From: Magallana gigas | Taxonomy: Eukaryota | Assembly: GCF_963853765.1 (NCBI RefSeq) | Contig: NC_088854.1 | Span: 1,798,001 to 1,862,000, forward strand | DNA length: 64,000 nucleotides | Reading direction: 5' to 3' | Part shown: positions 19,858 to 33,353 of the stretch, one piece after another | Layout: every line of letters begins with the position of its first letter | Numbering within the stretch: the stretch's first letter is position 1 | Translations under genes and position numbers: made by a program | Notes under the pieces: generated by a model | What the model was told of the DNA's origin: nothing | Seen by the model: only the letters and a program-made list of their open reading frames with translations | The model's database searches: none

Positions 19858-22186
19858 TCAAGCAAATCTGTCAAAACAATATTATTTTATAAGATAGGAA
19901 ATTCAGTTGACCCACGTGACTTGGTAGGTATTATTAATTTCCATGCCGCTGTATAAGAAATATTGTTCGCCTTGTTCCCATCCTGACGTAACGTCATCGC
20001 TGACCGCAGTTAACGTGTAACTGACGTCATGTAAGTCTTGGTTGGCGGACTGACATCCGGTTGTGCAGCGCCACTTCAGGGAAGAGAGCGCTGGAGGTAG
20101 GGAGGAGAGGTAATTACCGACGTCCTGGGCTGAACATGGCTGTCCACAGGGCCCATACCCCCGCTCCCAGACCAGTCTGTAGGTCAGTCTCTGGAAAAAA
20201 TATAACACGGCCTGAACTGCCTGAGCTTGTTTACAGGGAGTTTGTGCTAAGGATTTGAATCACTTTTTTTTTAAATGTTGAAGGAAAAATCTAAATGGAG
20301 GAAAAACTCTTGATATACTAAAGTGTACCTCTGATGAAGAGCCTAATTTTTATTTTAATATGGGTTTATTTTGTACAAATATTAAATACTTTTGCAATTT
20401 AGTAATTTTTTTAATTTGGTCCAGATGCCTTCGATTTTGGAATATCAAATATGACACTATTAAATTAACATTTTGATTTCAACATTTTTCGCTTAAATTG
20501 AAAAATTTTAATTTTCAAGCATGCAGTTTTCTTCAAAAAAATATTGAGCACAGGCTTAACCAAACTTAATATTTTCATCAAACAAAGATGAATAAATTAA
20601 GGTCAAGATCAAGTAAATGAAAGGAGCCTACATGTTTCTGAAATTTGAGAAATGAATTCTTAAAACGGTGCTCCATAACAATGCAGTAAAACTCGGTTAT
20701 AGCGAATACCTAGGGACCAGTGGATTTACTTTGATATAAATGTAATTCGTTATATTTGTCTAAGGAAATCTTATTACATGTAATTGTTATGGAGAATTCG
20801 CAATATACATGTGATCTTCCATATGACTACCATTTGTGCTTATTGTGGCATGCAATAAAATATCTTCAGTAGAAACCTAAAATAACCAGGTGGTAAACTG
20901 AAGGATTTAAATGCAAATAAATTCATTCTAAAATTGTTCTAATTGGTAAAGGGAAAGGTTAGAAAACACTTCGATGTTAAAAAAAAATTCACTCGCTTGG
21001 GCCTATATGCGTAAATTCGTTATTTATATAACCGAGTTCGTTTTAACCGTAAAATTTTGCATGAATTTGGTAAGAATTTTGTCGGGGACTCCACAAAAAT
21101 TCGCGAATTCACTATGTACTAAACGAGTTTTAATATAGCGTGGTTTTATAACATGTATTAGAGCATAATTTTAAGATAAACACAATGAAAAGTCATTTTC
21201 ATTCAAATATGAAGGAATCCATCTACAAATCTTTGAGTTTTTACTGTTTTTAGCGAATGTAATATAATTACCCATAATGCCTACAATCTTTCTGAAAACG
21301 GCATTTAAAATGTTCTTGACCTTTTCTTCGGAATAATATTAAATTAAATAGGTATTGGGATTGCTTTAAATAGAATTTCCAAAGAAGTATTTTTTATTTT
21401 CTACACAATTCCCTTATAGTCATAAAATACGGGAAAAAAGAAACAAATCAATGATGACGTCATGATACATGTAGATAACACAGCAAAAAGATAAATAGTT
21501 TATTTACGTTTTAAAGTCGTTTTAAACTACTCTGAAAAACATGCAATCTAACGTGCCTGAAAATTTGTTCATAAAATGTTTTCCATATGGGATGCGAAAA
21601 AGCATTCTTTTACCAATTTATCCTCTGTAGTCATTTGTGTATTTTTGAAATAAGAGAGGGATTTGTATAAGCCTTTTGGCTTGTTTCCCAATCTTATTGT
21701 ATTTATGCCTAATATATGTACCTATTATTGTAAAATATCAATAAAATATTGTTTAAACTAAAAAAAAACTAAAAAATGAATATCATGATACCTGAAAAAT
21801 ACGTGTATCAAACTATCCATAATTTGTTACGTATTATAAGATTTCTAATGAATTCGCCTCAAATTTAATTTATAATGAATACTAGTATATTGATTTCTGG
21901 GGGTATTAAACGTCGCTGTTAGTGAGTTTTGCTGTAGCAAAAATTTGAATATGTTAGATTTCGTTGGTTTTTTTTTTAATATTCCAAAATTTAGACGATA
22001 AAGAGTTTACATAAAATATCCATCTTCTAAAAAAGAAGCACTTCGTTACCAGGGGGTACTTGTCTATATACTTACGGCAATCCTGTTATAGAAATAGCCA
22101 CTGATTGTTCCAGCGATCAGGTGCCCGTTGGTGCTGGAAATGATGAGACAGAGTAACAACTCGGCAATCAACAGGAATGTCCTCAT
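13949..22186 (-). CDS. Type I membrane protein: signal peptide, 'integrin beta-like/Sib-like' cysteine ectodomain, 2 EGF repeats, TM, short tail (~573 aa)
   Basis: 13 coding exons: 22186-22076, 20190-19916, 19631-19500, 17514-17379, 17169-17008, 16483-16326, 16223-16041, 15650-15610, 15209-15096, 14823-14740, 14493-14452, 14312-14299, 14218-13949; total 1722 nt with continuous frame. Motifs HLIAGTIS, RNDTGVPNASP, DPDADSVRCRLATPEECGNAC, DVDDC...CQNGGKC. TM VVPAVLGTIAGVATALVVTGCCWWFLF. Needs GC donors at 15609 and 14451. Confidence 0.85.
15690..15789. repeat. Perfect 100-bp palindrome (50+50 nt, no loop)
   Basis: Arms are exact reverse complements centred on GACT|AGTC at 15739/15740. Confidence 0.95.
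16772..16982 (-). mobile_element. 5'-truncated tRNA-derived SINE with V-domain-like core, (GTTCA)n tail and 12-bp TSD
   Basis: Minus strand shows B-box-like GGGTCGATCC and core TTCTCTCCAGGTACTCCGGTTTCTTCCCAC; TSD GGTATTTTGAAC at 16760-16771 and 16983-16994. Confidence 0.8.
17802..17883. mobile_element. 82-bp minimal MITE: 32-bp perfect TIRs, 18-nt spacer, 9-bp TSD TATAGGGCG
   Basis: TSD at 17793-17801 and 17884-17892; arms 17802-17833 and 17852-17883. Confidence 0.93.
17924..18886 (+). mobile_element. Possible Helentron-type non-autonomous element (HINE-like)
   Basis: Starts AAAACAAG with subterminal ATGGGCCGC; ends with GC hairpin CGGACCGCCTTCCGGCGGCCCG that contains the inverted copy. Confidence 0.4.
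18935..19277. mobile_element. 343-bp MITE with TTAA TSD and GGT(GG/TC)CTCACTACA TIRs (Kolobok-like), carrying a tRNA-like segment
   Basis: TTAA at 18931-18934 and 19278-19281; imperfect TIRs; A/B-box-like sequence on - strand at about 19103-19172. Confidence 0.8.
19782..19851. repeat. (GA)n microsatellite
   Basis: Pure GA run; explains the RE/SL repeat ORFs. Confidence 0.98.
20684..21135. mobile_element. Degenerate Tc1/pogo-like MITE (TIR CAGTAAAACTCG)
   Basis: CAGTAAAACTCGGTTATAGCGAA at 20684; imperfect inverted copy CGAGTTTTAATA near 21124. Confidence 0.5.
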
Positions 22187-24442
22187 TGGAAGATGCTGTG
22201 GAGTTCTCTAGGATATATATATTTCACATGAAAGTAAAAACTTTTTAAACCAAAAACAGGAGGAAAAGTGGATTTTGTGCTATCTATGAAAACCCTCCCA
22301 TAAATTTTCTTTCAAGACCAAATTTGTCTCCCCGAATCAATATTCACACTGGACAATATTTAATATCGTCTGTATACGGATGACCAGCCTTATCACTTGC
22401 AATATGGAAATCAAACAAAAGCTCTACCGGATAAACTCAATGGCACTCAAACGGCATGACCTCTACCGCTTTTTCTCAAAACATTCGCATATTCTCCATC
22501 TGTATACAAAGATTTCTTAAAAGTCTAGTTCATTTTATTGAACGCCTTTGGTATTCCTCAATAAGCGAAAGTTTATCTAGACCTAGTACTTTATCATACA
22601 CGGCTAAGACCCCGGTCAGGGGATGCTTTTTAGCGACGCTGGCTTTTGGATTGTCCGAGTCATGGACAGGATTAAGTCATTTAGACGTTTTATCACGTAC
22701 TTAGCCGTACCCTGCGACGCCAAAGCGGCGTATGAATGGTCAGTTCTGTGACCCCCGAAACTAAGCTCCAGTAGATATAGAAATCTTAGATCTTTTCAAA
22801 TAGAATAAATGCTATAATTTTGACGCAAACTACTACGGACGATGGATAGTCGGGTTATTTCAAAGAGTGTGGTGGCTATTTGTATCGAGGCAATAGGGGA
22901 AATTAAATATCCTCCAAGTGATATATTTCATGGCACATGTGTGCAAAATCTCATTTACAGTGTTATCTCTGACAAGTTATAAATTAATACGGTTAATAAA
23001 TTCGATCCTACCACAATTCAATGAGTATATTATGAAGTTTAGAGTTATTATGTAGCAAAGGAAAGGAGCGTACAATGTCTGTCGAATCCATCGCACCTAG
23101 GATATTTAAACGACTTATGTGCATCTCATATAATGGAATCTTACATTTGAAGGTGTGCACCACTACATGTATGATATAGAACTGAATTATCTGACCATTT
23201 ACACACATACATTTATACTTTATACTTTTCTTTTTAATTTCATTTCTATGATTATTTTCTTAACATTACAACGCGATATCAAACAATCTCTGACTGTGTT
23301 AGCGCTATTATTTATGAAACGTTATTTTGAATGGGCAAGATCATTTATGTATTTTTTATCGGGATCCGAAGAGTTTTAAATGTTTCCAAACTAATTCTAG
23401 ACCTATTACATAAAATTTTAAAAAATAATGTTTTACCTAAAAGGAAGCAAAAGCAAATTTAAAAAGAAAATTCCCTTCTGATTTGAACACCATCTCAATC
23501 GGGTGTCCTCCGCCTATCACACTGAGCTACGTTGACATATCCTAAATGTTGTGAATAACTTTTATAGTTTGACAAATATAACTAAATTTTTAAGTTTTTT
23601 TGTGAAAACCACGAATTTTGACCCATAATGGGTCTAGACCCCACTTAGATAAATCAATAATAACATTAAAAAAAAGTTATCCTTTTAATGAAAGTACTTT
23701 TAGGATAGAGTCTAGTCCCATTCATACCAAAATATCGCAATTTATGATTTATCACAGTAAATGGTCAAGATTTAGGCCAAAACGTCGTGTGGCTTAATTT
23801 GGAAACGATTATAATACTAGTATGAAAACACGTTATTGACACATGCATCGTGAAAGTTATAGCATAAATATTGTATACAAGCCAAGAATACATATTTTAT
23901 GTACATTCGAACAAGGTCTTTTTTATTGCTTCAAGTAGGGGATATGTAACGCCTTATACGCCCTTGCCCTTCAAAACTCATATATTTGTTTCTAACTTTC
24001 AATTACAGATAACCTCCAATGTTACTGAAGTTTAAAAGTGTACAAAAGTATTCAAAACATCCGCATAAATTTCAAGTCATAAGGAATGAAATACTTCTAT
24101 AGGATGGAGGGGTTGGTGGTCCCTATAGCTTCATGAGCGGATCCAAATTATCCTCCAGGGTGGGGGTGGGGCAACTAAACTACATGTATGTGGCCAGTAC
24201 TTCATGGCCGAATCTAGATTATCCCCCGGGGTTGGGGTAACTATACTATGTGGCTAGTACTTCATGGCCGTTTCTAGATTACCGGGGCGGGGGTAACTAT
24301 ACTATGTGGCTAGTACTTCATGGCCTGATCTAGATTACCCCACGGGGCGGGGGTAACTATACTATGTGGCTAGTACTTCATGGCCGGATCCAAATAACCC
24401 CACGGGGTGGGGGTAACTATACTATGATGGTAGTTTTTCATG

Positions 24443-27400
24443 GGCAATCAGTTTTTAGAACGCAGTTCGCAGTTCGCAATTGAATAGTGAACTGCGTTCT
24501 ATAGAACGCAGTTCGCAATTCAAAATTTAGTGCGATTGAATAGTGAACTGCGTTCTATAGAACGCAGTTCGCAATTCAAAATTTAGAATTCATATTTGGG
24601 GCCCGCTTGCCTTATATGCAATTGAATAGTGAACTGCGTTCTATAGAACGCAGTTCGCAATTCAAAATTTAGAATTCATATTTGGGGCCCGCTTGCCTTA
24701 TATGCAATTGAATAGTGAACTGCGTTCTATAGAACGCAGTTCGCAATTCAAAATTTAGAATTCATATTTGGGGCCCGCTTGCCTTCTATGCAATTGAATA
24801 GTGAACTGCGTTCTATAGAACGCAGTTCGCAATTCAAAATTTAGAATTCATACTTGGGGCCCGCCTGCCTTTTATGCAATTGAATAGTGAACTGCGTTCT
24901 ATAGAACGCAGTTCGCAATTCAAAATTTAGAATTCATACTTGGGGCCCGCTTGCCTTATATGCAATTGAATAGTGAACTGCGTTCTATCTAGAACGCAGT
25001 TCGAGTTCGAAATTCAAAATTTAGAATTCATATTTGAGGCCCGCTTGCCTTATATGCAATTGAATAGTGAACTGCGTTCTATCTAGAACGCAGTTTGCAA
25101 TTCAAATTTAGAATTCATATTTGGGTAGTTTTTAGCTCACCGAAACGAAGTCGGGGGGAGCTTATGCTATACCCTCGGCGTCGGCGTCACAATATCAAGT
25201 ATACGTAAATTAGTGGCCAATGAACCTATCAATACAAAATGTTTATTAAAATTGCACTTCAATGAATATTTAATTTCGTGGATCAACTAAACAATGATCC
25301 ACGAAATTCATATCCTTATCTAGTGACACACCAGTAACTATATTTTTATTCATATGCACTGATAATAAATGAAAATAATATATATATTTCAAAGTACATT
25401 TTATTTATTTTTTATCCATGCTTGCGTGCATGCATATTTCAGCATGCGCAGTCTAATATTTCCGGACACGACTTCCTACTAGACTGTGAAACTTGCAAAG
25501 TTGCGTTAGCGCGACGGCGTGTTAAGCAAAGTTGTGTTAGCGCGACGGCGTGTTGTGCAAAGTTGTGTTAGCGCGACGGCGTGTTGTGCAAAGTTGCGTT
25601 AGCGCGACGGTGTGTTGTGTACATGTGTTAGCGCAATGTCTCGTTTATCTGAACGCGATGTCGCGCTAATGCAAATGGCCCTATCCGGACACCATACAGA
25701 TCTCAAAAACTATAGATTACTGCATCACCAAATTTCACAGTGGTAGTGAAATACCACTAGTAGATGCCCCTGAAAATTTCGGTCCCAAAAAATGAATTGC
25801 GAACTGCGTTCTAGAACGCAGTTCACTATTCAATTGCATATAAGGCAAGCGGGCCCCAAATATAAATTCTAAATTTTGAATCGCGAACTGCATTCTAGAT
25901 AGAACGCAGTTCACTATTCAATTGCATATAAGGCAATCGGGCCCCAAATATGAATTCTAGATTTTGAATTGCGAACTGCGTTCTAGATAGAACGCAGTTC
26001 ACTATTCAATTGCATATAAGGCAAGCGGGCCCCAAGTATGAATTCTAAATTTTGAATTGCGAACTGCGTTCTAGATAGAACGCAGTTCACTATTCAATTG
26101 CATATAAGGCAAGCGGGCCCCAAATATATATGAATTCTAAATTTTGAATTGCGAACTGCGTTCTAGATAGAACGCAGTTCACTATTCAACAATTTGAATT
26201 GCGAACTGCGTTCTAGATAGAACGCAGTTCACTATTCAATTGCATATAAGGCAAGCGGGCCCCAAATATGAATTCTAAATTTTGAATTGCGAACTGCGTT
26301 CTATAGAACGCAGTTCACTATTCAATTGCATTTAAGGCAAGCGGGCCCCAAATATGAATTCTAAATTTTGAATTGCGAACTGCGTTCTAGATAGAACGCA
26401 GTTCACTATTCAATTGCATATAAGGCAAGCGGGCCCCAAGTATGAATTCTAAATTTTGAATTGCGAACTGCGTTCTAGATAGAACGCAGTTCACTATTCA
26501 ATTGCATATAAGGCAAGCGGGCCCCAAATATATATGAATTCTAAATTTTGAATTGCGAACTGCGTTCTAGATAGAACGCAGTTCACTATTCAACAATTTG
26601 AATTGCGAACTGCGTTCTAGATAGAACGCAGTTCACTATTCAATTGCATATAAGGCAAGCGGGCCCCAAATATGAATTCTAAATTTTGAATTGCGAACTG
26701 CGTTCTATAGAACGCAGTTCACTATTCAATTGCATTTAAGGCAAGCGGGCCCCAAATATGAATTCTAAATTTTGAATTGCGAACTGCGTTCTATAGAACG
26801 CAGTTCACTATTCAATTGCATATAAGGCAAGCGGGCCCCAAATATGAATTCTAAATTTTGAATTGCGAACTGCGTTCTATAGAACGCAGTTCACTATTCA
26901 ATTGCATTTAAGGCAAGCGGGCCCCAAATATGAATTCTAAATTTTGAATTGCGAACTGCGTTCTATAGAACGCAGTTCACTATTCAATTGCATTTAAGGC
27001 AAGCGGGCCCCAAATATGAATTCTAAATTTTGAATTGCGAACTGCGTTCTATAGAACGCAGTTCACTATTCAATTGCATATAAGGCAAGCGGGCCCCAAA
27101 TATGAATTCTAAATTTTGAAATTCTAAATTTTGAATTGCGAACTGCGTTCTATAGAACGCAGTTCGCTATTCAATTGCATATAAGGCAAGCGGGCCCCAA
27201 ATATGAATTCTAAATTTTGAATTGCGAACTGCGTTCTATAGAACGCAGTTCACTATTCAATTGCATATAAGGCAAGCGGGTCCCAAGTATGAATTCTAAA
27301 TTTTGAATTGCGAACTGCGTTCTATAGAACGCAGTTCACTATTCAATTGCATATAAGGCAAGCGGGCCCCAAGTATGAATTCTAAATTTTGAATTGCGAA

Positions 27401-27854
27401 CTGCGTTCTATAGAACGCAGTTCACTATTCAATTGCCTATAAGGCAAGCGGGCCCCAAATATGAATTCTAAATTTTGAATTGCGAACTGCGTTCTATAGA
27501 ACGCAGTTCACTATTCAATTGCATATAAGGCAAGCGGGCCCCAAGTATGAATTCTAAATTTTGAATTGCGAACTGCGTTCTATAGAACGCAGTTCACTAT
27601 TCAATTGCCTATAAGGCAAGCGGGCCCCAAGTATGAATTCTAAATTTGAATTGCGAACTGCGTTCTATAGAACGCAGTTCACTATTCAATTGCCTATAAG
27701 GCAAGCGGGCCCCAAGTTTGAATTGCGAACTGCGTTCTATAGAACGCAGTTCACTATTCAATCGCACTAAATTTTGAATTGCGAACTGCGTTCTATAGAA
27801 CGCAGTTCACTATTCAATTGCGAACTGCGAACTGCGTTCTAAAAACCGATTGCC
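24443..27854. mobile_element. 3412-bp Foldback-type non-autonomous DNA transposon with satellite-built inverted arms and 9-bp TSD
   Basis: Termini GGCAATC(A/G)GTTTTTAGAACGCAG at both ends; TSD TTTTTCATG at 24434-24442 and 27855-27863; arms of 86-bp units (left about 24443-25125, right about 25790-27854) in opposite orientation; no ORF. Confidence 0.93.
25495..25640. repeat. 31-bp GC-rich tandem repeat (about 4.5 copies) in the Foldback spacer
   Basis: GCAAAGTTGTGTTAGCGCGACGGCGTGTTGT at 25495, 25526, 25557 and onward. Confidence 0.9.
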
Positions 27855-29047
27855 TTTTTCATGGCCGGATCTAGATAATCCATGGAGTGGGGGTAACTAT
27901 ACTATGTGGGTAGTTCTTCAAGTGCGGATCCAGATAATCCAACGGGTGGGGGGTAAATATACTATGTGGGTAGTTCTTCATGGTCGGATCCAGATCATTA
28001 CCCGGAGTGGGTTGGAGTAACAATACTATAAATGAATTATTGGGTTTTAACATATTTCATTCTTTTGGATGTTGATGATAAGAGGATTGGGTACAAGTTT
28101 GTGAATCCTACAACGTTCTCCCCTTTATAGTTTTAACACAAAACAATATTTAATATCTAAAATATATACAAATTTACTAAAGATAATTAAAACAAGCAAA
28201 TAACCGAAACAACCACAGTTGATATATATATATATTTACAAAAACCACTTTAATGAATATTTTATAATTAAAATCAAATAATAAACGACATGCAATAATT
28301 CTTTATATAAACAATTGCACTATGGATTTTTTTCTCTGTACTAAACATTTGAGTCATTTATACCATTTCTTTATTTTTTTTTTCTAGGAGTAAAGAATTC
28401 TATCCAATCACATCCACTGGGACAAAAGACGATTTTTAGATGATCAATCTACACTTAGTGACGCTATGATTTAAACATATTTTATTGATTTGATATGAAC
28501 ATATTTCAAAGAAAACAAATTGTTCACGCACAAGTTCTGACAACTTAAATAACGAGGTCCTCACAATATTTTGTTGATACTCAAATGGATACTTTGATTC
28601 ATATTATAAATGAGTATATGTACTTTGCAGTATTGCTCTCAAATAGGCAGGTGCCATATAATGATAAATTTTATATTCTAAATACCTTATTTTGACTCAC
28701 CTATTTGTAAGCAATTCCCACCCAGTTTCATATTAATAAAAAGTGAATTAAATTTGATTTTTCCAAGGAAAAAAGGAAAATGGTCATAATTTTCCATGTA
28801 AATTAACATCAGTTTGTGCATTCCTTAGCAACAATTCTAACAAGTAAAACTGTGATCTTTATACATTGGTGGCAAGAGAATCACAAGATAGCGCTGTCTT
28901 CAGTGCCTAGGTACAATTCATTCAGAAAGGCAAGAATCAATCACTAAGTTACATGGACACATTTATTCACACATCTATTACAATCACATCTTATAACAGT
29001 CATATTGCACACAATGAAAGTCAATAACGGTAAACAATACAACAGTT

Positions 29048-31414: not shown

Positions 31415-32699
31415 GATAAACGATGTGCTCTATTGATTGGAGATTCTGGTTTACTTACAGCCTCATTAAATCTGGAAAACATAAAGAAAATTATTCACTT
31501 TTAAAAATATAAACACCAGATGTCAAAACTATACACTGAAAAAATAATATTTATGTTCAAATATATTTCCACAGGCTGTTCATAAATGATCTTTTATCAT
31601 AAAGAGATAAACGTGTGCGAGACTCGTATCACTTAAAACCGTAAATGCAAATGATAAAGTCGTCATACAACGTTTTGAAAGTCATTATTGACAGATGCTG
31701 ACAGAATCGTTACGCTGTAAGATATCAGAATGATCGACTACGCAGCTGTCAATTTCCATTTATTTTGTTTTCAACTGTTCAAGCGTCTTTTTGTTTATCG
31801 TGTACTGCAAAAGTTATTTATTCATGTACCATTTATCTAAATTTCATCAAATATACTTGAGCAGAATTATATAGATTATACAAATAAATTAGTGAATAGT
31901 GATTACCATGTTTACGCCCTCAAACCATCGAACTTACTGAAGAGAAAACTCGAAATGAATTTTTTTTTTACTGTAATTCCGATCCCGATTGTAATTGGCA
32001 TCTAGTTTATGATCTTTGAAATCTTTATCTAAATCTAAAGTTAAAGTCATTTTACAATAACCCATTTGTGACAACCCTCTTTCTTTTATGAAATTTCTAA
32101 AACAAAAAAACCCCTCAGCTTTAAAATAAGTACATCATTAAAAGATTAAAATAATATTTTAAAATCAGGCAATATTTACCTTTCTACAAATGGAAAAGTT
32201 GGAGAGGAAGGAGACGGCAACAAGAATCAGGATGATAAGCAATGGAATGAGGAAGCCTAGAATTGTGAGCATCCTGAGAAGTCTGGGGAGAAAAGACGAT
32301 CGCAATCTGTTACATTTGTTGGGCCTCGTACATCAGAGGACAATTTTTTAAAACTTGCCTGGAAAAAAGAAACATCCCCTTTGCAGAGACTGTATGGAAT
32401 TACAGTGTATTTAGCAAAGGAGTTGCATACTACCTAAGCTTCAAAGTTCTTTTCTATAAGTAAGTTTAAGCTTAAGGTAAAAATTTGCTTTGATAAAATT
32501 GGGGGATAGGCTAGCTCTCTGTCCACTCCCATTACTTTGTGCCTGCACTAAATACATTCACAAAGCTATATCACATATTAATTACGGATAGACATGGTAT
32601 ACACAATAAATGGATGCAGGGAACACGACTATAAATCCCGTAATACAGACACATGGAGAATGATTAGACTAAAGAGGGGACCCAGAAAAAAAAACCCCA

Positions 32700-33290
32700 T
32701 AAAACATGGATAGAGTATAAACCCAGAACATATGGAACATGTATTGGGCATAGACACTTGGAACATGGATATGACATAACCCAGAACATAGACACCTGGA
32801 ACATATATAGCTATATAGGGCATTAACCCAGAAAATAGACACTTGGAACATGGATAGGGCATAACCCAGAAAATAGACACTTGGAACATGGATAGGGCAT
32901 AACCCAGAACATAGACACTTGGAAAATGGATAGGGTATAAACCAAAAAAATAGACACTTGGAACATGGATAGGGTATAAACAAAAAAAAATAGACACTTG
33001 GAACATGGATAGGGTATAACCCCCCCCCCCAAAAAAAAAAATTAGACACTTGGAACATGGATAGGGCAAAACCAAAAAATAGACACTTGGATCATAGATA
33101 GGGTATATACGAAAAAAAAATAGACACTTGGAACATGGATAGGGTGTAAAAAAAAAAATAGACACTTGGAACATGGATAGGGTGTAATCGAGAACATGTA
33201 CACTTGGAACATGGATAGGGTATAATCCAGAACATAGACACTTGGAACATAGATAGGACATTAACCCAGAAAAAAAATCATTTAATATGA
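32700..33290. repeat. 38-39-bp minisatellite (ATAGACACTTGGAACATGGATAGGGCATAACCCAGAAC), about 15 copies, with variable A-tract
   Basis: Period 38 (32835 to 32873); degenerate CTTGGAACA copies continue to about 33690. Confidence 0.92.
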
Positions 33291-33295
33291 ATAGG

Positions 33296-33353
33296 GCCAT
33301 ATCTTTAGTATTTTCCATTGAATCGATTCAATTGAAAATACTAAAGATATGGC
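33296..33353. repeat. 58-bp near-perfect palindrome (one mismatch)
   Basis: GCCATATCTTTAGTATTTTCCATTGAAT-CG-ATTCAATTGAAAATACTAAAGATATGGC. Confidence 0.9.

What the first reader, a model, noticed from the sequence alone, without database searches (positions are those of the whole stretch)
24443..27854. Foldback transposon whose arms are satellites of an 86-bp unit with a 26-bp perfect palindrome
Seen: exact 9-bp TSD, mirrored termini, about 6 full units in the left arm and about 21 in the right in inverted orientation, each containing GAACTGCGTTCTATAGAACGCAGTTC, and no coding capacity. Known: Drosophila FB and sea-urchin TU elements have modular repeat-built arms and ~9-bp TSDs. Inference: a mobile satellite with symmetry at three scales (palindrome, tandem unit, kb-scale inverted arms) that can seed satellite DNA, extrude cruciforms, and form ~700 bp of dsRNA if transcribed. 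It lies 1.2 kb past the TRAPPC2 stop and 2.3 kb upstream of the Sib-like ATG.
Basis: partly seen in the sequence, partly recalled or inferred. Interest (0 to 1): 0.8.

Follow-up and report, generated by a model that had tools for sequence, protein, structure and literature searches.

The report
Oyster foldback transposon carrying CgiSat25
This 3.4-kb stretch is a real, recently inserted, gene-less hairpin-shaped ("foldback") DNA transposon of the Pacific oyster whose two arms are arrays of the published satellite CgiSat25; it is a new example of a known kind of element, and this scan already reported the same family at another locus.

Summary
Window 24443-27854 is bounded by a perfect 9-bp duplication (TTTTTCATG) and by 141-nt termini that are 99% complementary. 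The left arm has 8 and the right arm 25 palindrome-bearing 86/88-bp units in opposite orientation, around a 667-bp non-coding middle. Removing the element and one duplication copy restores a 60-bp host minisatellite unit in register.

It is one copy of a family with about 209 termini (roughly 100 elements, 0.5-12 kb) across the chromosomes. Of 25 complete copies, 21 have perfect 9-bp duplications. Their shared middle segment is 99.2% identical (median), so the family is young. None encodes a transposase.

The repeat unit is identical to the published satellite CgiSat25, which the 2021 satellitome paper lists only with a Repbase 'NonLTR/R1' hit. Longer copies also carry a CgiSat37 array in a 2.7-kb centre that the window copy lacks.

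The most likely mechanism is cut-and-paste by a Mutator/foldback-type transposase supplied in trans. This rests on duplication length and architecture only, because no partner was found.

This scan already reported the family at C2:13.18 Mb (s1-375661). Read-based tests (empty alleles, long reads, RNA) could not be run. Verdict: new member of a known kind, moderate interest.

The parts
24434..24442 (.). Left copy of the 9-bp target-site duplication TTTTTCATG
   Evidence: Read directly; confirmed identical to the right copy.
24443..24583 (+). Left terminal inverted repeat. A 14-nt terminus-specific cap (GGCAATCAGTTTTT) is followed by a half-palindrome, a CGCAGTT heptad slippage and truncated 56-bp units. 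Positions 34-88 of the terminus are identical to the first 55 nt of the monomer.
   Evidence: I22: 141 nt, 99% complementary to 27714-27854; alignment of terminus to monomer; the 27-nt terminus occurs 102 + 107 times in the genome, control 0.
24443..25125 (+). Left arm: 8 palindrome-bearing units of CgiSat25 (6 full 86-bp units, with the 88-bp variant at the inner end)
25126..25792 (.). Non-coding middle domain. The junction at 25188/25189 is where other copies hold a further 2.7 kb (CgiSat37 array plus AT-rich sequence).
   Evidence: junction with TC microhomology; no ORF of 60 aa or more, no Pfam hit; 98.4-99.5% identical to 15 other copies.
25494..25619 (.). 31-bp minisatellite (4.1 copies) inside the middle domain, also present in the other copies
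25793..27854 (-). Right arm: 25 palindrome-bearing units of CgiSat25 in inverted orientation. The inner part holds the 88-bp variant with a 404-bp higher-order repeat; the outer part holds the 86-bp variant. It ends in the right terminus ...CTAAAAACCGATTGCC.
27855..27863 (.). Right copy of the 9-bp target-site duplication TTTTTCATG
24187..24433 (.). Host 60-bp minisatellite, left part (the insertion target)
   Evidence: period 60, 4.3 copies; register restored after excising the element; unique to this locus.
27864..27995 (.). Host 60-bp minisatellite, right part

Best explanation
Window 24443-27854 is one copy of a young, non-autonomous foldback-type DNA transposon family of the Pacific oyster.

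Structure. Each element consists of a 14-nt terminal cap (GGCAATCRGTTTTT) followed almost at once by arrays of the 86/88-bp satellite CgiSat25. The arrays run in opposite orientation in the two arms, around a non-coding middle. The window copy is a 3.4-kb short form. It lacks the 2.7-kb centre, including a CgiSat37 array, that most copies carry. This is most simply an internal deletion at a 2-bp (TC) microhomology.

Insertion. The element inserted into a 60-bp host minisatellite by a cut-and-paste reaction that makes 9-bp staggered cuts.

Inferred, not shown:
- The enzyme is a Mutator/foldback (MULE/NOF-type) DDE transposase supplied in trans.
- The reiterated palindrome-bearing units act as extra binding sites or simply as the hairpin-forming arms.
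- The number of units per arm changes quickly by unequal exchange and slippage. This would explain the 8 versus 25 units and the 404-bp higher-order repeat here.

Consequence. The family is the vehicle that scatters CgiSat25 over all chromosomes.
For: Shown at this locus:
- Exact 9-bp TSD and 141-nt, 99% complementary termini.
- Excising the element plus one TSD copy restores the 60-bp host repeat in register.

Shown for the family:
- The 27-nt terminus occurs 102 times forward and 107 times reverse, against 0 for the control.
- Of 25 complete copies (0.54-9.9 kb), 21 have perfect 9-bp TSDs with unrelated sequences and 2 are near-perfect.
- The shared 606-bp middle segment has a median pairwise identity of 99.2% across 16 copies.
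- No ORF of 150 aa or more was found in 20 long copies, except a nested LINE with RT and endonuclease domains.
- Small copies are pure hairpins with only 2 nt between the arms.

Shown for the satellite:
- The 88-bp unit equals the published CgiSat25 consensus. The central 177-bp unit matches CgiSat37.
- The monomer marker gives 1118 exact hits genome-wide. The first 100 listed all lie inside elements bounded by family termini, and the 25 complete copies hold 495 of them.
- The palindrome hairpin folds at -19 kcal/mol, z = -5.8.

From the literature:
- Foldback elements have long repeat-built TIRs. Most are assigned to Mutator on the basis of 8-10-bp TSDs, often without a known partner (Tetris, PMC4079207).
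Against: - No transposase partner was found. None of 81 PF10551 (MULE) hits lies within 10 kb of any listed terminus. The 14-nt cap occurs outside the family only 11 times against 3 in the control. The superfamily assignment therefore rests on TSD length and architecture alone.
- Two of 25 copies have unrelated flanks (L004, L037), probably recombinants.
- No read-level evidence was available: no empty allele, no long-read check of arm lengths, no RNA.
- Whether the window copy lost the 2.7-kb centre or the other copies gained it is not settled.
An autonomous copy among the uninspected 5-9.5-kb elements is not strictly excluded.
Confidence: 0.85

Rival explanations
1. It is a foldback element but not of the Mutator/FB superfamily. 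It would be mobilised by another DDE transposase that makes 8-9-bp duplications (for example Merlin), or by an undescribed enzyme.
For: No MULE-domain hit lies near any terminus, and no other element shares the 14-nt cap. The foldback architecture is known to arise independently in different superfamilies (Galileo belongs to P; discussed in PMC4079207).
Against: A strict 9-bp TSD in 21 of 25 copies is the Mutator/Drosophila-FB value. P/Galileo gives 7-8 bp. Most other superfamilies give 2-8 bp (established knowledge, not tested here). Intact MULE transposases are abundant in this genome (81 hits, many with open frames over 900 aa).
Confidence: 0.2
2. The window copy is the ancestral form, and the 2.7-kb centre with CgiSat37 in the other copies is a later insertion (a Helentron-type non-autonomous element) into a master copy. 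On this reading the window copy is not a deletion derivative.
For: CgiSat37 is listed as Helitron-related, and Helitrons insert without a TSD. The boundaries are clean and identical in all copies examined.
Against: Fifteen of 16 copies with this middle segment carry the centre, and the window copy is 98.4-99.5% identical to them. A single microhomology-mediated (TC) deletion is therefore more parsimonious. The boundary bases (…GCGTC|CGAACC … AAAATC|ACAAT) do not show the canonical Helitron 5'-TC…CTRR-3' between A and T (the Helitron rule is from general knowledge).
Confidence: 0.25
3. It is not a mobile element at all, but a local inverted duplication of a satellite array or an assembly artefact (for example chimeric foldback reads).
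For: Inverted tandem arrays are error-prone in assemblies, and no reads could be examined.
Against: The same capped architecture recurs at about 100 sites on all large contigs, with site-specific 9-bp duplications. The host minisatellite register is restored exactly on excision. Only the exact number of units per arm could be an assembly error.
Confidence: 0.02

Closest known systems
Tetris foldback transposon of Drosophila virilis (Dias et al. 2014, PMC4079207)
   Same: Non-autonomous. [quoted passage not shown] The middle domain is non-coding and variable. TSDs are 8-10 bp. The partner transposase was not found, and Mutator was proposed from TSD length.
   Different: Tetris has an 866-bp unique terminal domain before its 220-bp repeats, and only 3 complete copies were found. 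Here the unique cap is only 14 nt and the unit is 86/88 bp with a 26-bp perfect palindrome. About 100 young copies exist. No large standalone arrays of the satellite appeared among the 100 monomer sites inspected.
Drosophila melanogaster FB (foldback) elements / FB-NOF
   Same: The arms are built of short tandem repeats reaching almost to the termini. The TSD is 9 bp. Many copies consist of arms only. Size is very heterogeneous. (General knowledge; the FB literature is cited in PMC4079207.)
   Different: FB repeats are 10/20/31 bp and unrelated in sequence. Some FB copies carry NOF with a transposase gene. No coding copy was found here.
CgiSat25, satellite DNA of Crassostrea gigas (Tunjić-Cvitanić et al. 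2021, PMC8268682)
   Same: The 88-bp arm unit is identical to the published consensus. The satellite is reported on all 10 chromosomes in short scattered arrays, as expected from dispersed elements.
   Different: The paper lists it only in tables, with a Repbase similarity 'NonLTR/R1', and gives no carrier element, TIRs or TSD. Here it forms the arms of a TIR transposon.
Helentron/Helitron-carried satellites of oysters (Vojvoda Zeljko et al. 2020, PMC7492417; PMC8268682)
   Same: Satellite-like arrays are dispersed across the oyster genome inside non-autonomous DNA elements. The longer copies of this family even contain one such satellite (CgiSat37) in their centre.
   Different: Helitrons have no TIRs and make no TSD. 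This family has 141-nt inverted termini and 9-bp TSDs, so the dispersal mechanism differs.
Foldback family carrying CgiSat33 in the same genome
   Same: Gene-less foldback transposon whose arms are a published oyster satellite with no previously known mobile carrier; partner enzyme unidentified (not re-tested here).
   Different: That family has GAGG...CCTC ends, a 7-bp TSD and a 105-bp unit. This one has GGCAATC ends, a 9-bp TSD and an 86/88-bp unit. They are independent families, probably of different superfamilies.

Membership tests
Foldback-type DNA transposons (structural class) | Long terminal inverted repeats made largely of tandem repeats | tested here: met
   Arms of 0.68 and 2.06 kb made of 86/88-bp units in opposite orientation, with inverted matches up to 484 nt at 97%.
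Foldback-type DNA transposons (structural class) | Target-site duplication flanking dispersed copies at unrelated sites | tested here: met
   9-bp TSD here; 21 of 25 complete copies have perfect 9-bp TSDs of different sequence; empty site reconstructed.
Foldback-type DNA transposons (structural class) | Variable or absent non-coding middle domain; strong size heterogeneity | tested here: met
   Copies range from 543 bp to 12.2 kb. Small ones have 2 nt between the arms. The middle has no ORF or Pfam hit.
Mutator/MULE superfamily (including FB/NOF) | TSD of about 9 bp (8-11) | tested here: met
Mutator/MULE superfamily (including FB/NOF) | An autonomous relative encoding a MULE DDE transposase and sharing the termini | tested here: inconclusive
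   The genome has 81 PF10551 hits, but none lies within 10 kb of a listed terminus. The 14-nt cap occurs outside the family only at near-chance level. The termini of the MULEs could not be fetched.
CgiSat25 satellite | Monomer sequence matches the published 88-bp consensus | tested here: met
   The TRF consensus of 26193-26593, rotated, equals the sequence in Data S1 of PMC8268682. The 86-bp units differ by the 2-nt spacer in the palindrome.
Helitron/Helentron-associated satellite carriers | No TIRs, no TSD, insertion at a fixed dinucleotide | tested here: not met
   The element has 141-nt inverted termini and a 9-bp TSD.
Galileo-like (P superfamily) foldback elements | 7-8-bp TSD and CA.../...TG type termini | tested here: not met
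   The TSD is 9 bp in 21 of 25 copies and the termini are GGCAATC.../...GATTGCC. The family criteria are from general knowledge and PMC4079207.
microRNA precursor families (Rfam) | Score at or above the family's gathering threshold | tested here: not met
   The best hit is mir-5014 at 55.9 bits against a threshold of 101. All 29 hits are below threshold and track the palindromic unit.

The most novel reading that the evidence does not exclude
The family is currently mobile in oyster populations, so this copy would be an insertion polymorphism 2.3 kb upstream of one gene and 1.2 kb downstream of TRAPPC2. It would be driven by one of the giant NOF-type Mutator transposases present in the genome, recognising the palindrome reiterated in every CgiSat25 unit. 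That would make CgiSat25 a 'satellite of transposase-binding sites' that spreads only by transposition. Together with the CgiSat33 family, it would show that foldback elements, and not only Helitrons, build the scattered oyster satellitome.
Probability: 0.25. Interest if true: 0.6.

Novelty: new member of a known kind. Interest (0 to 1): 0.4.

Why it matters
Oyster satellite DNAs are unusual in being scattered in short arrays over all chromosomes, and published work attributes this mainly to Helitron/Helentron carriers. This family shows a second route. A catalogued satellite (CgiSat25, so far labelled only with a Repbase 'NonLTR/R1' similarity) is, as far as sampled, carried in the arms of a young TIR foldback transposon with 9-bp duplications. 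That corrects the annotation of CgiSat25 and explains its presence on all ten chromosomes.

About 100 near-identical copies with very different unit numbers offer a natural series for measuring how fast tandem arrays expand and contract inside a mobile element. For this locus, it places a 3.4-kb hairpin-forming insertion in the 3.4-kb-wide space between two genes. That is a candidate structural polymorphism, but no effect on either gene has been shown.

Tried and rejected
- **Reads.** There is no test of empty-site alleles, long-read architecture or transcription.
- **Partner by domain.** 81 MULE hits (PF10551) were found, none within 10 kb of a listed terminus.
- **Partner by terminus.** The 14-nt cap with non-family continuation gave 11 hits against 3 in the control. 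One of them is a family member with an indel, and none is near a MULE hit.
- **Coding capacity.** The only long ORF in 20 long copies is a nested LINE. There were no ORFs of 150 aa or more in the ends of 18 further loci. The element's own short ORFs gave no Pfam hit.
- **Paralogous empty site.** The host 60-bp minisatellite is unique to this locus, so I used the internal register instead.
- **RNA families and tRNA.** Only sub-threshold miRNA-like hits caused by the palindrome, and no tRNA.
- **Other collections.** The palindrome pattern has 0 hits in metagenome contigs.
- **Literature by sequence string.** 0 papers. 'Foldback' together with 'Crassostrea' returns only papers citing Tetris.
- **2024 five-oyster satellitome paper.** It has no text supplements held and does not mention CgiSat25.
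- **Internal monomers as alternative ends.** Rejected, because every copy, including the 0.5-kb ones, ends in the same 14-nt cap, which is absent from the monomer.
- **Repbase/Dfam.** Could not be consulted.
Full report
**Observation**

The element begins GGCAATCAGTTTTTAGAACGCAGTTCG and ends with the reverse complement of the same motif, with one A/G difference. It is flanked on both sides by TTTTTCATG. The outermost 141 nt of the two ends are 99% complementary (I22), and arm-to-arm inverted matches reach 484 nt at 97% (I1).

Tandem Repeats Finder gives a left array at 24531-25125 (period 86, 6.8 copies). The right array at 25793-27724 has periods of 86 and 88 and a 404-bp higher-order repeat present three times.

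Anchoring on the palindrome, I count 33 units, 8 on the left and 25 on the right:
- 21 have the perfect 26-bp palindrome.
- 11 have a 28-bp variant with a 4-nt spacer. These lie at the inner ends of both arms.
- 1 has a 24-bp variant.

The palindrome extends imperfectly to 44 nt and folds as single-stranded DNA at -19 kcal/mol (z = -5.8). No ORF of 60 aa or more lies inside, and the two longest short ORFs have no Pfam hit.

**Insertion at this locus**

The element sits inside a 60-bp minisatellite (24187-24443 and 27858-27995) that is unique to this locus. Deleting the element and one copy of the 9-mer joins the two halves into a complete 60-bp unit in register with its neighbours. This is direct internal evidence of an insertion that duplicated 9 bp of target.

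- Sedlin/TRAPPC2 exons lie on the minus strand, with the stop codon 1.19 kb to the right of the element.
- A signal-peptide-like first exon starts at 22186 on the minus strand, 2.26 kb to the left. I did not test what that gene is.

**The family**

The window is G000:C2:1798001-1862000 of a 564-Mb assembly. Earlier notes of this scan call it the Pacific oyster, and the exact match to a published C. gigas satellite agrees.

- The 27-nt terminus, with up to 2 mismatches, occurs 102 times forward and 107 times reverse, against 0 for the control. That implies roughly 100 elements on all large contigs.
- A subfamily has TTTTTGG instead of TTTTTAG in the terminus.
- I assembled 25 complete copies from fetched loci, 543 bp to 9.9 kb long, plus a 12.2-kb copy fetched in two overlapping loci (L043, L051). 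Of the 25, 21 have perfect 9-bp duplications of unrelated, moderately AT-rich sequence (69% AT). Two are near-perfect and two have unrelated flanks.
- The small copies are pure hairpins with 2 nt between the arms.
- Arm sizes vary from 0 to 56 full units and are often very unequal.
- The 606-bp unique middle segment is 98.1-100% identical between 16 copies, median 99.2%. The family therefore amplified recently, while its arrays changed length quickly.
- None of 20 long copies has an ORF of 150 aa or more, apart from a nested non-LTR retrotransposon with endonuclease, RT and zf-RVT domains in the 12.2-kb copy.

**What the repeats are**

The 88-bp consensus of the right arm, rotated, is identical to CgiSat25 in Data S1 of Tunjić-Cvitanić et al. 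2021 (PMC8268682). That paper lists CgiSat25 as 88 bp, 0.03% of the genome and present on all ten chromosomes. It gives a Repbase similarity 'NonLTR/R1' and says nothing more about its organisation.

Most copies of the family have an extra 2.7 kb in the middle. This includes 6-7 units of a 177-bp repeat that matches CgiSat37, a Helitron-related satellite. In the window copy this centre is missing, and the sequence passes from ...GGCGTC to ACAATATC... at 25188/25189 with a 2-bp TC overlap. I read this as an internal deletion. The alternative, that the others gained an insertion, is kept as a rival.

The terminus itself is almost entirely satellite. Positions 34-88 equal the first 55 nt of the monomer, and positions 15-33 repeat the half-palindrome with a CGCAGTT slippage. 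Only the first 14 nt are specific to the ends.

The monomer marker GGGGCCCGCTTGCC has 1118 exact hits in the genome. The first 100 listed, on C1 and C2, all lie inside five elements bounded by family termini. My 25 complete copies hold 495 of the 1118. As far as sampled, CgiSat25 therefore lives inside this transposon.

**Mechanism**

*Shown:* insertion with a 9-bp duplication; inverted capped termini; many young dispersed copies; no coding capacity.

*Inferred:* cut-and-paste by a trans-acting DDE transposase of the Mutator/foldback group. The 9-bp duplication and repeat-built arms are the hallmarks of Drosophila FB and of Tetris, and that literature assigns such elements to Mutator on the same grounds (PMC4079207).

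I could not find the partner:
- The genome has 81 MULE-domain hits, many in open frames of 900-1500 aa, but none lies within 10 kb of a listed terminus.
- The 14-nt cap outside the family occurs only 11 times against 3 for the control.
This is a lead only, and I did not test it.

**Comparison and novelty**

The closest described element is Tetris of D. virilis, followed by Drosophila FB. The element differs from the Helitron/Helentron carriers that dominate the oyster satellite literature, because it has TIRs and a TSD. It also differs from Galileo-type foldbacks, which have a 7-8-bp TSD.

In the searchable literature no paper links foldback elements to oyster satellites or contains these sequence strings. 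Repbase and Dfam could not be checked.

This scan had already reported the same family at C2:13.18 Mb (s1-375661). That copy is my L038, which I confirmed to have a perfect TSD, 22 + 22 units and the CgiSat37 centre. A different foldback family carrying CgiSat33 has also been reported.

The present finding is therefore a confirmed, well-formed copy of a family that is new to the literature I could search but not to this scan, and of a known kind.

Noticed in passing
G000:C2:4546034-4634566 (loci L061-L065): Seven right-hand termini of the family, all on the same strand, are spaced 11.6-24 kb apart. The five loci read share the same flanking sequence (97-100% identical over 1.2-3 kb). One insertion has therefore been amplified as part of a host tandem duplication of about 11.6 kb.
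   Followed up: partly
L043:4782-8531 (G000:C4, inside the 12.2-kb copy): An intact 1249-aa ORF of a non-LTR retrotransposon (endonuclease, RT, zf-RVT) is nested in the CgiSat37-bearing centre of a family copy. Nested LINE/foldback composites of this kind might explain the odd Repbase label 'NonLTR/R1' given to CgiSat25 in the 2021 paper.
   Followed up: partly
window 24187-24443 and 27858-27995: A 60-bp minisatellite (about 6.6 units after excising the element) found nowhere else in the genome by BLAST; origin unknown.
   Followed up: partly
genome-wide, e.g. G000:C2:563708-564467, C4:56767341, C4:56849139: A subfamily has termini reading GGCAATCGGTTTTTGGAACGC (A to G at position 15 of the terminus). 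A second subfamily (L035, L058/L059, L061-L065) has arms that lack the GGGGCCCGCTTGCC part of the monomer.
   Followed up: no
window 32629-33318 (minus strand): A 229-aa ORF and several overlapping ORFs with a reiterated ...YPCSKCL...IHVPSVY... motif. This is probably another tandem repeat read as protein.
   Followed up: no
window 24600-27600: Rfam covariance models for several miRNA precursor families (mir-5014, MIR4208, mir-753) score 25-56 bits on every CgiSat25 unit. All are well below their gathering thresholds. This is a hairpin artefact that could cause false miRNA calls in oyster annotations.
   Followed up: yes
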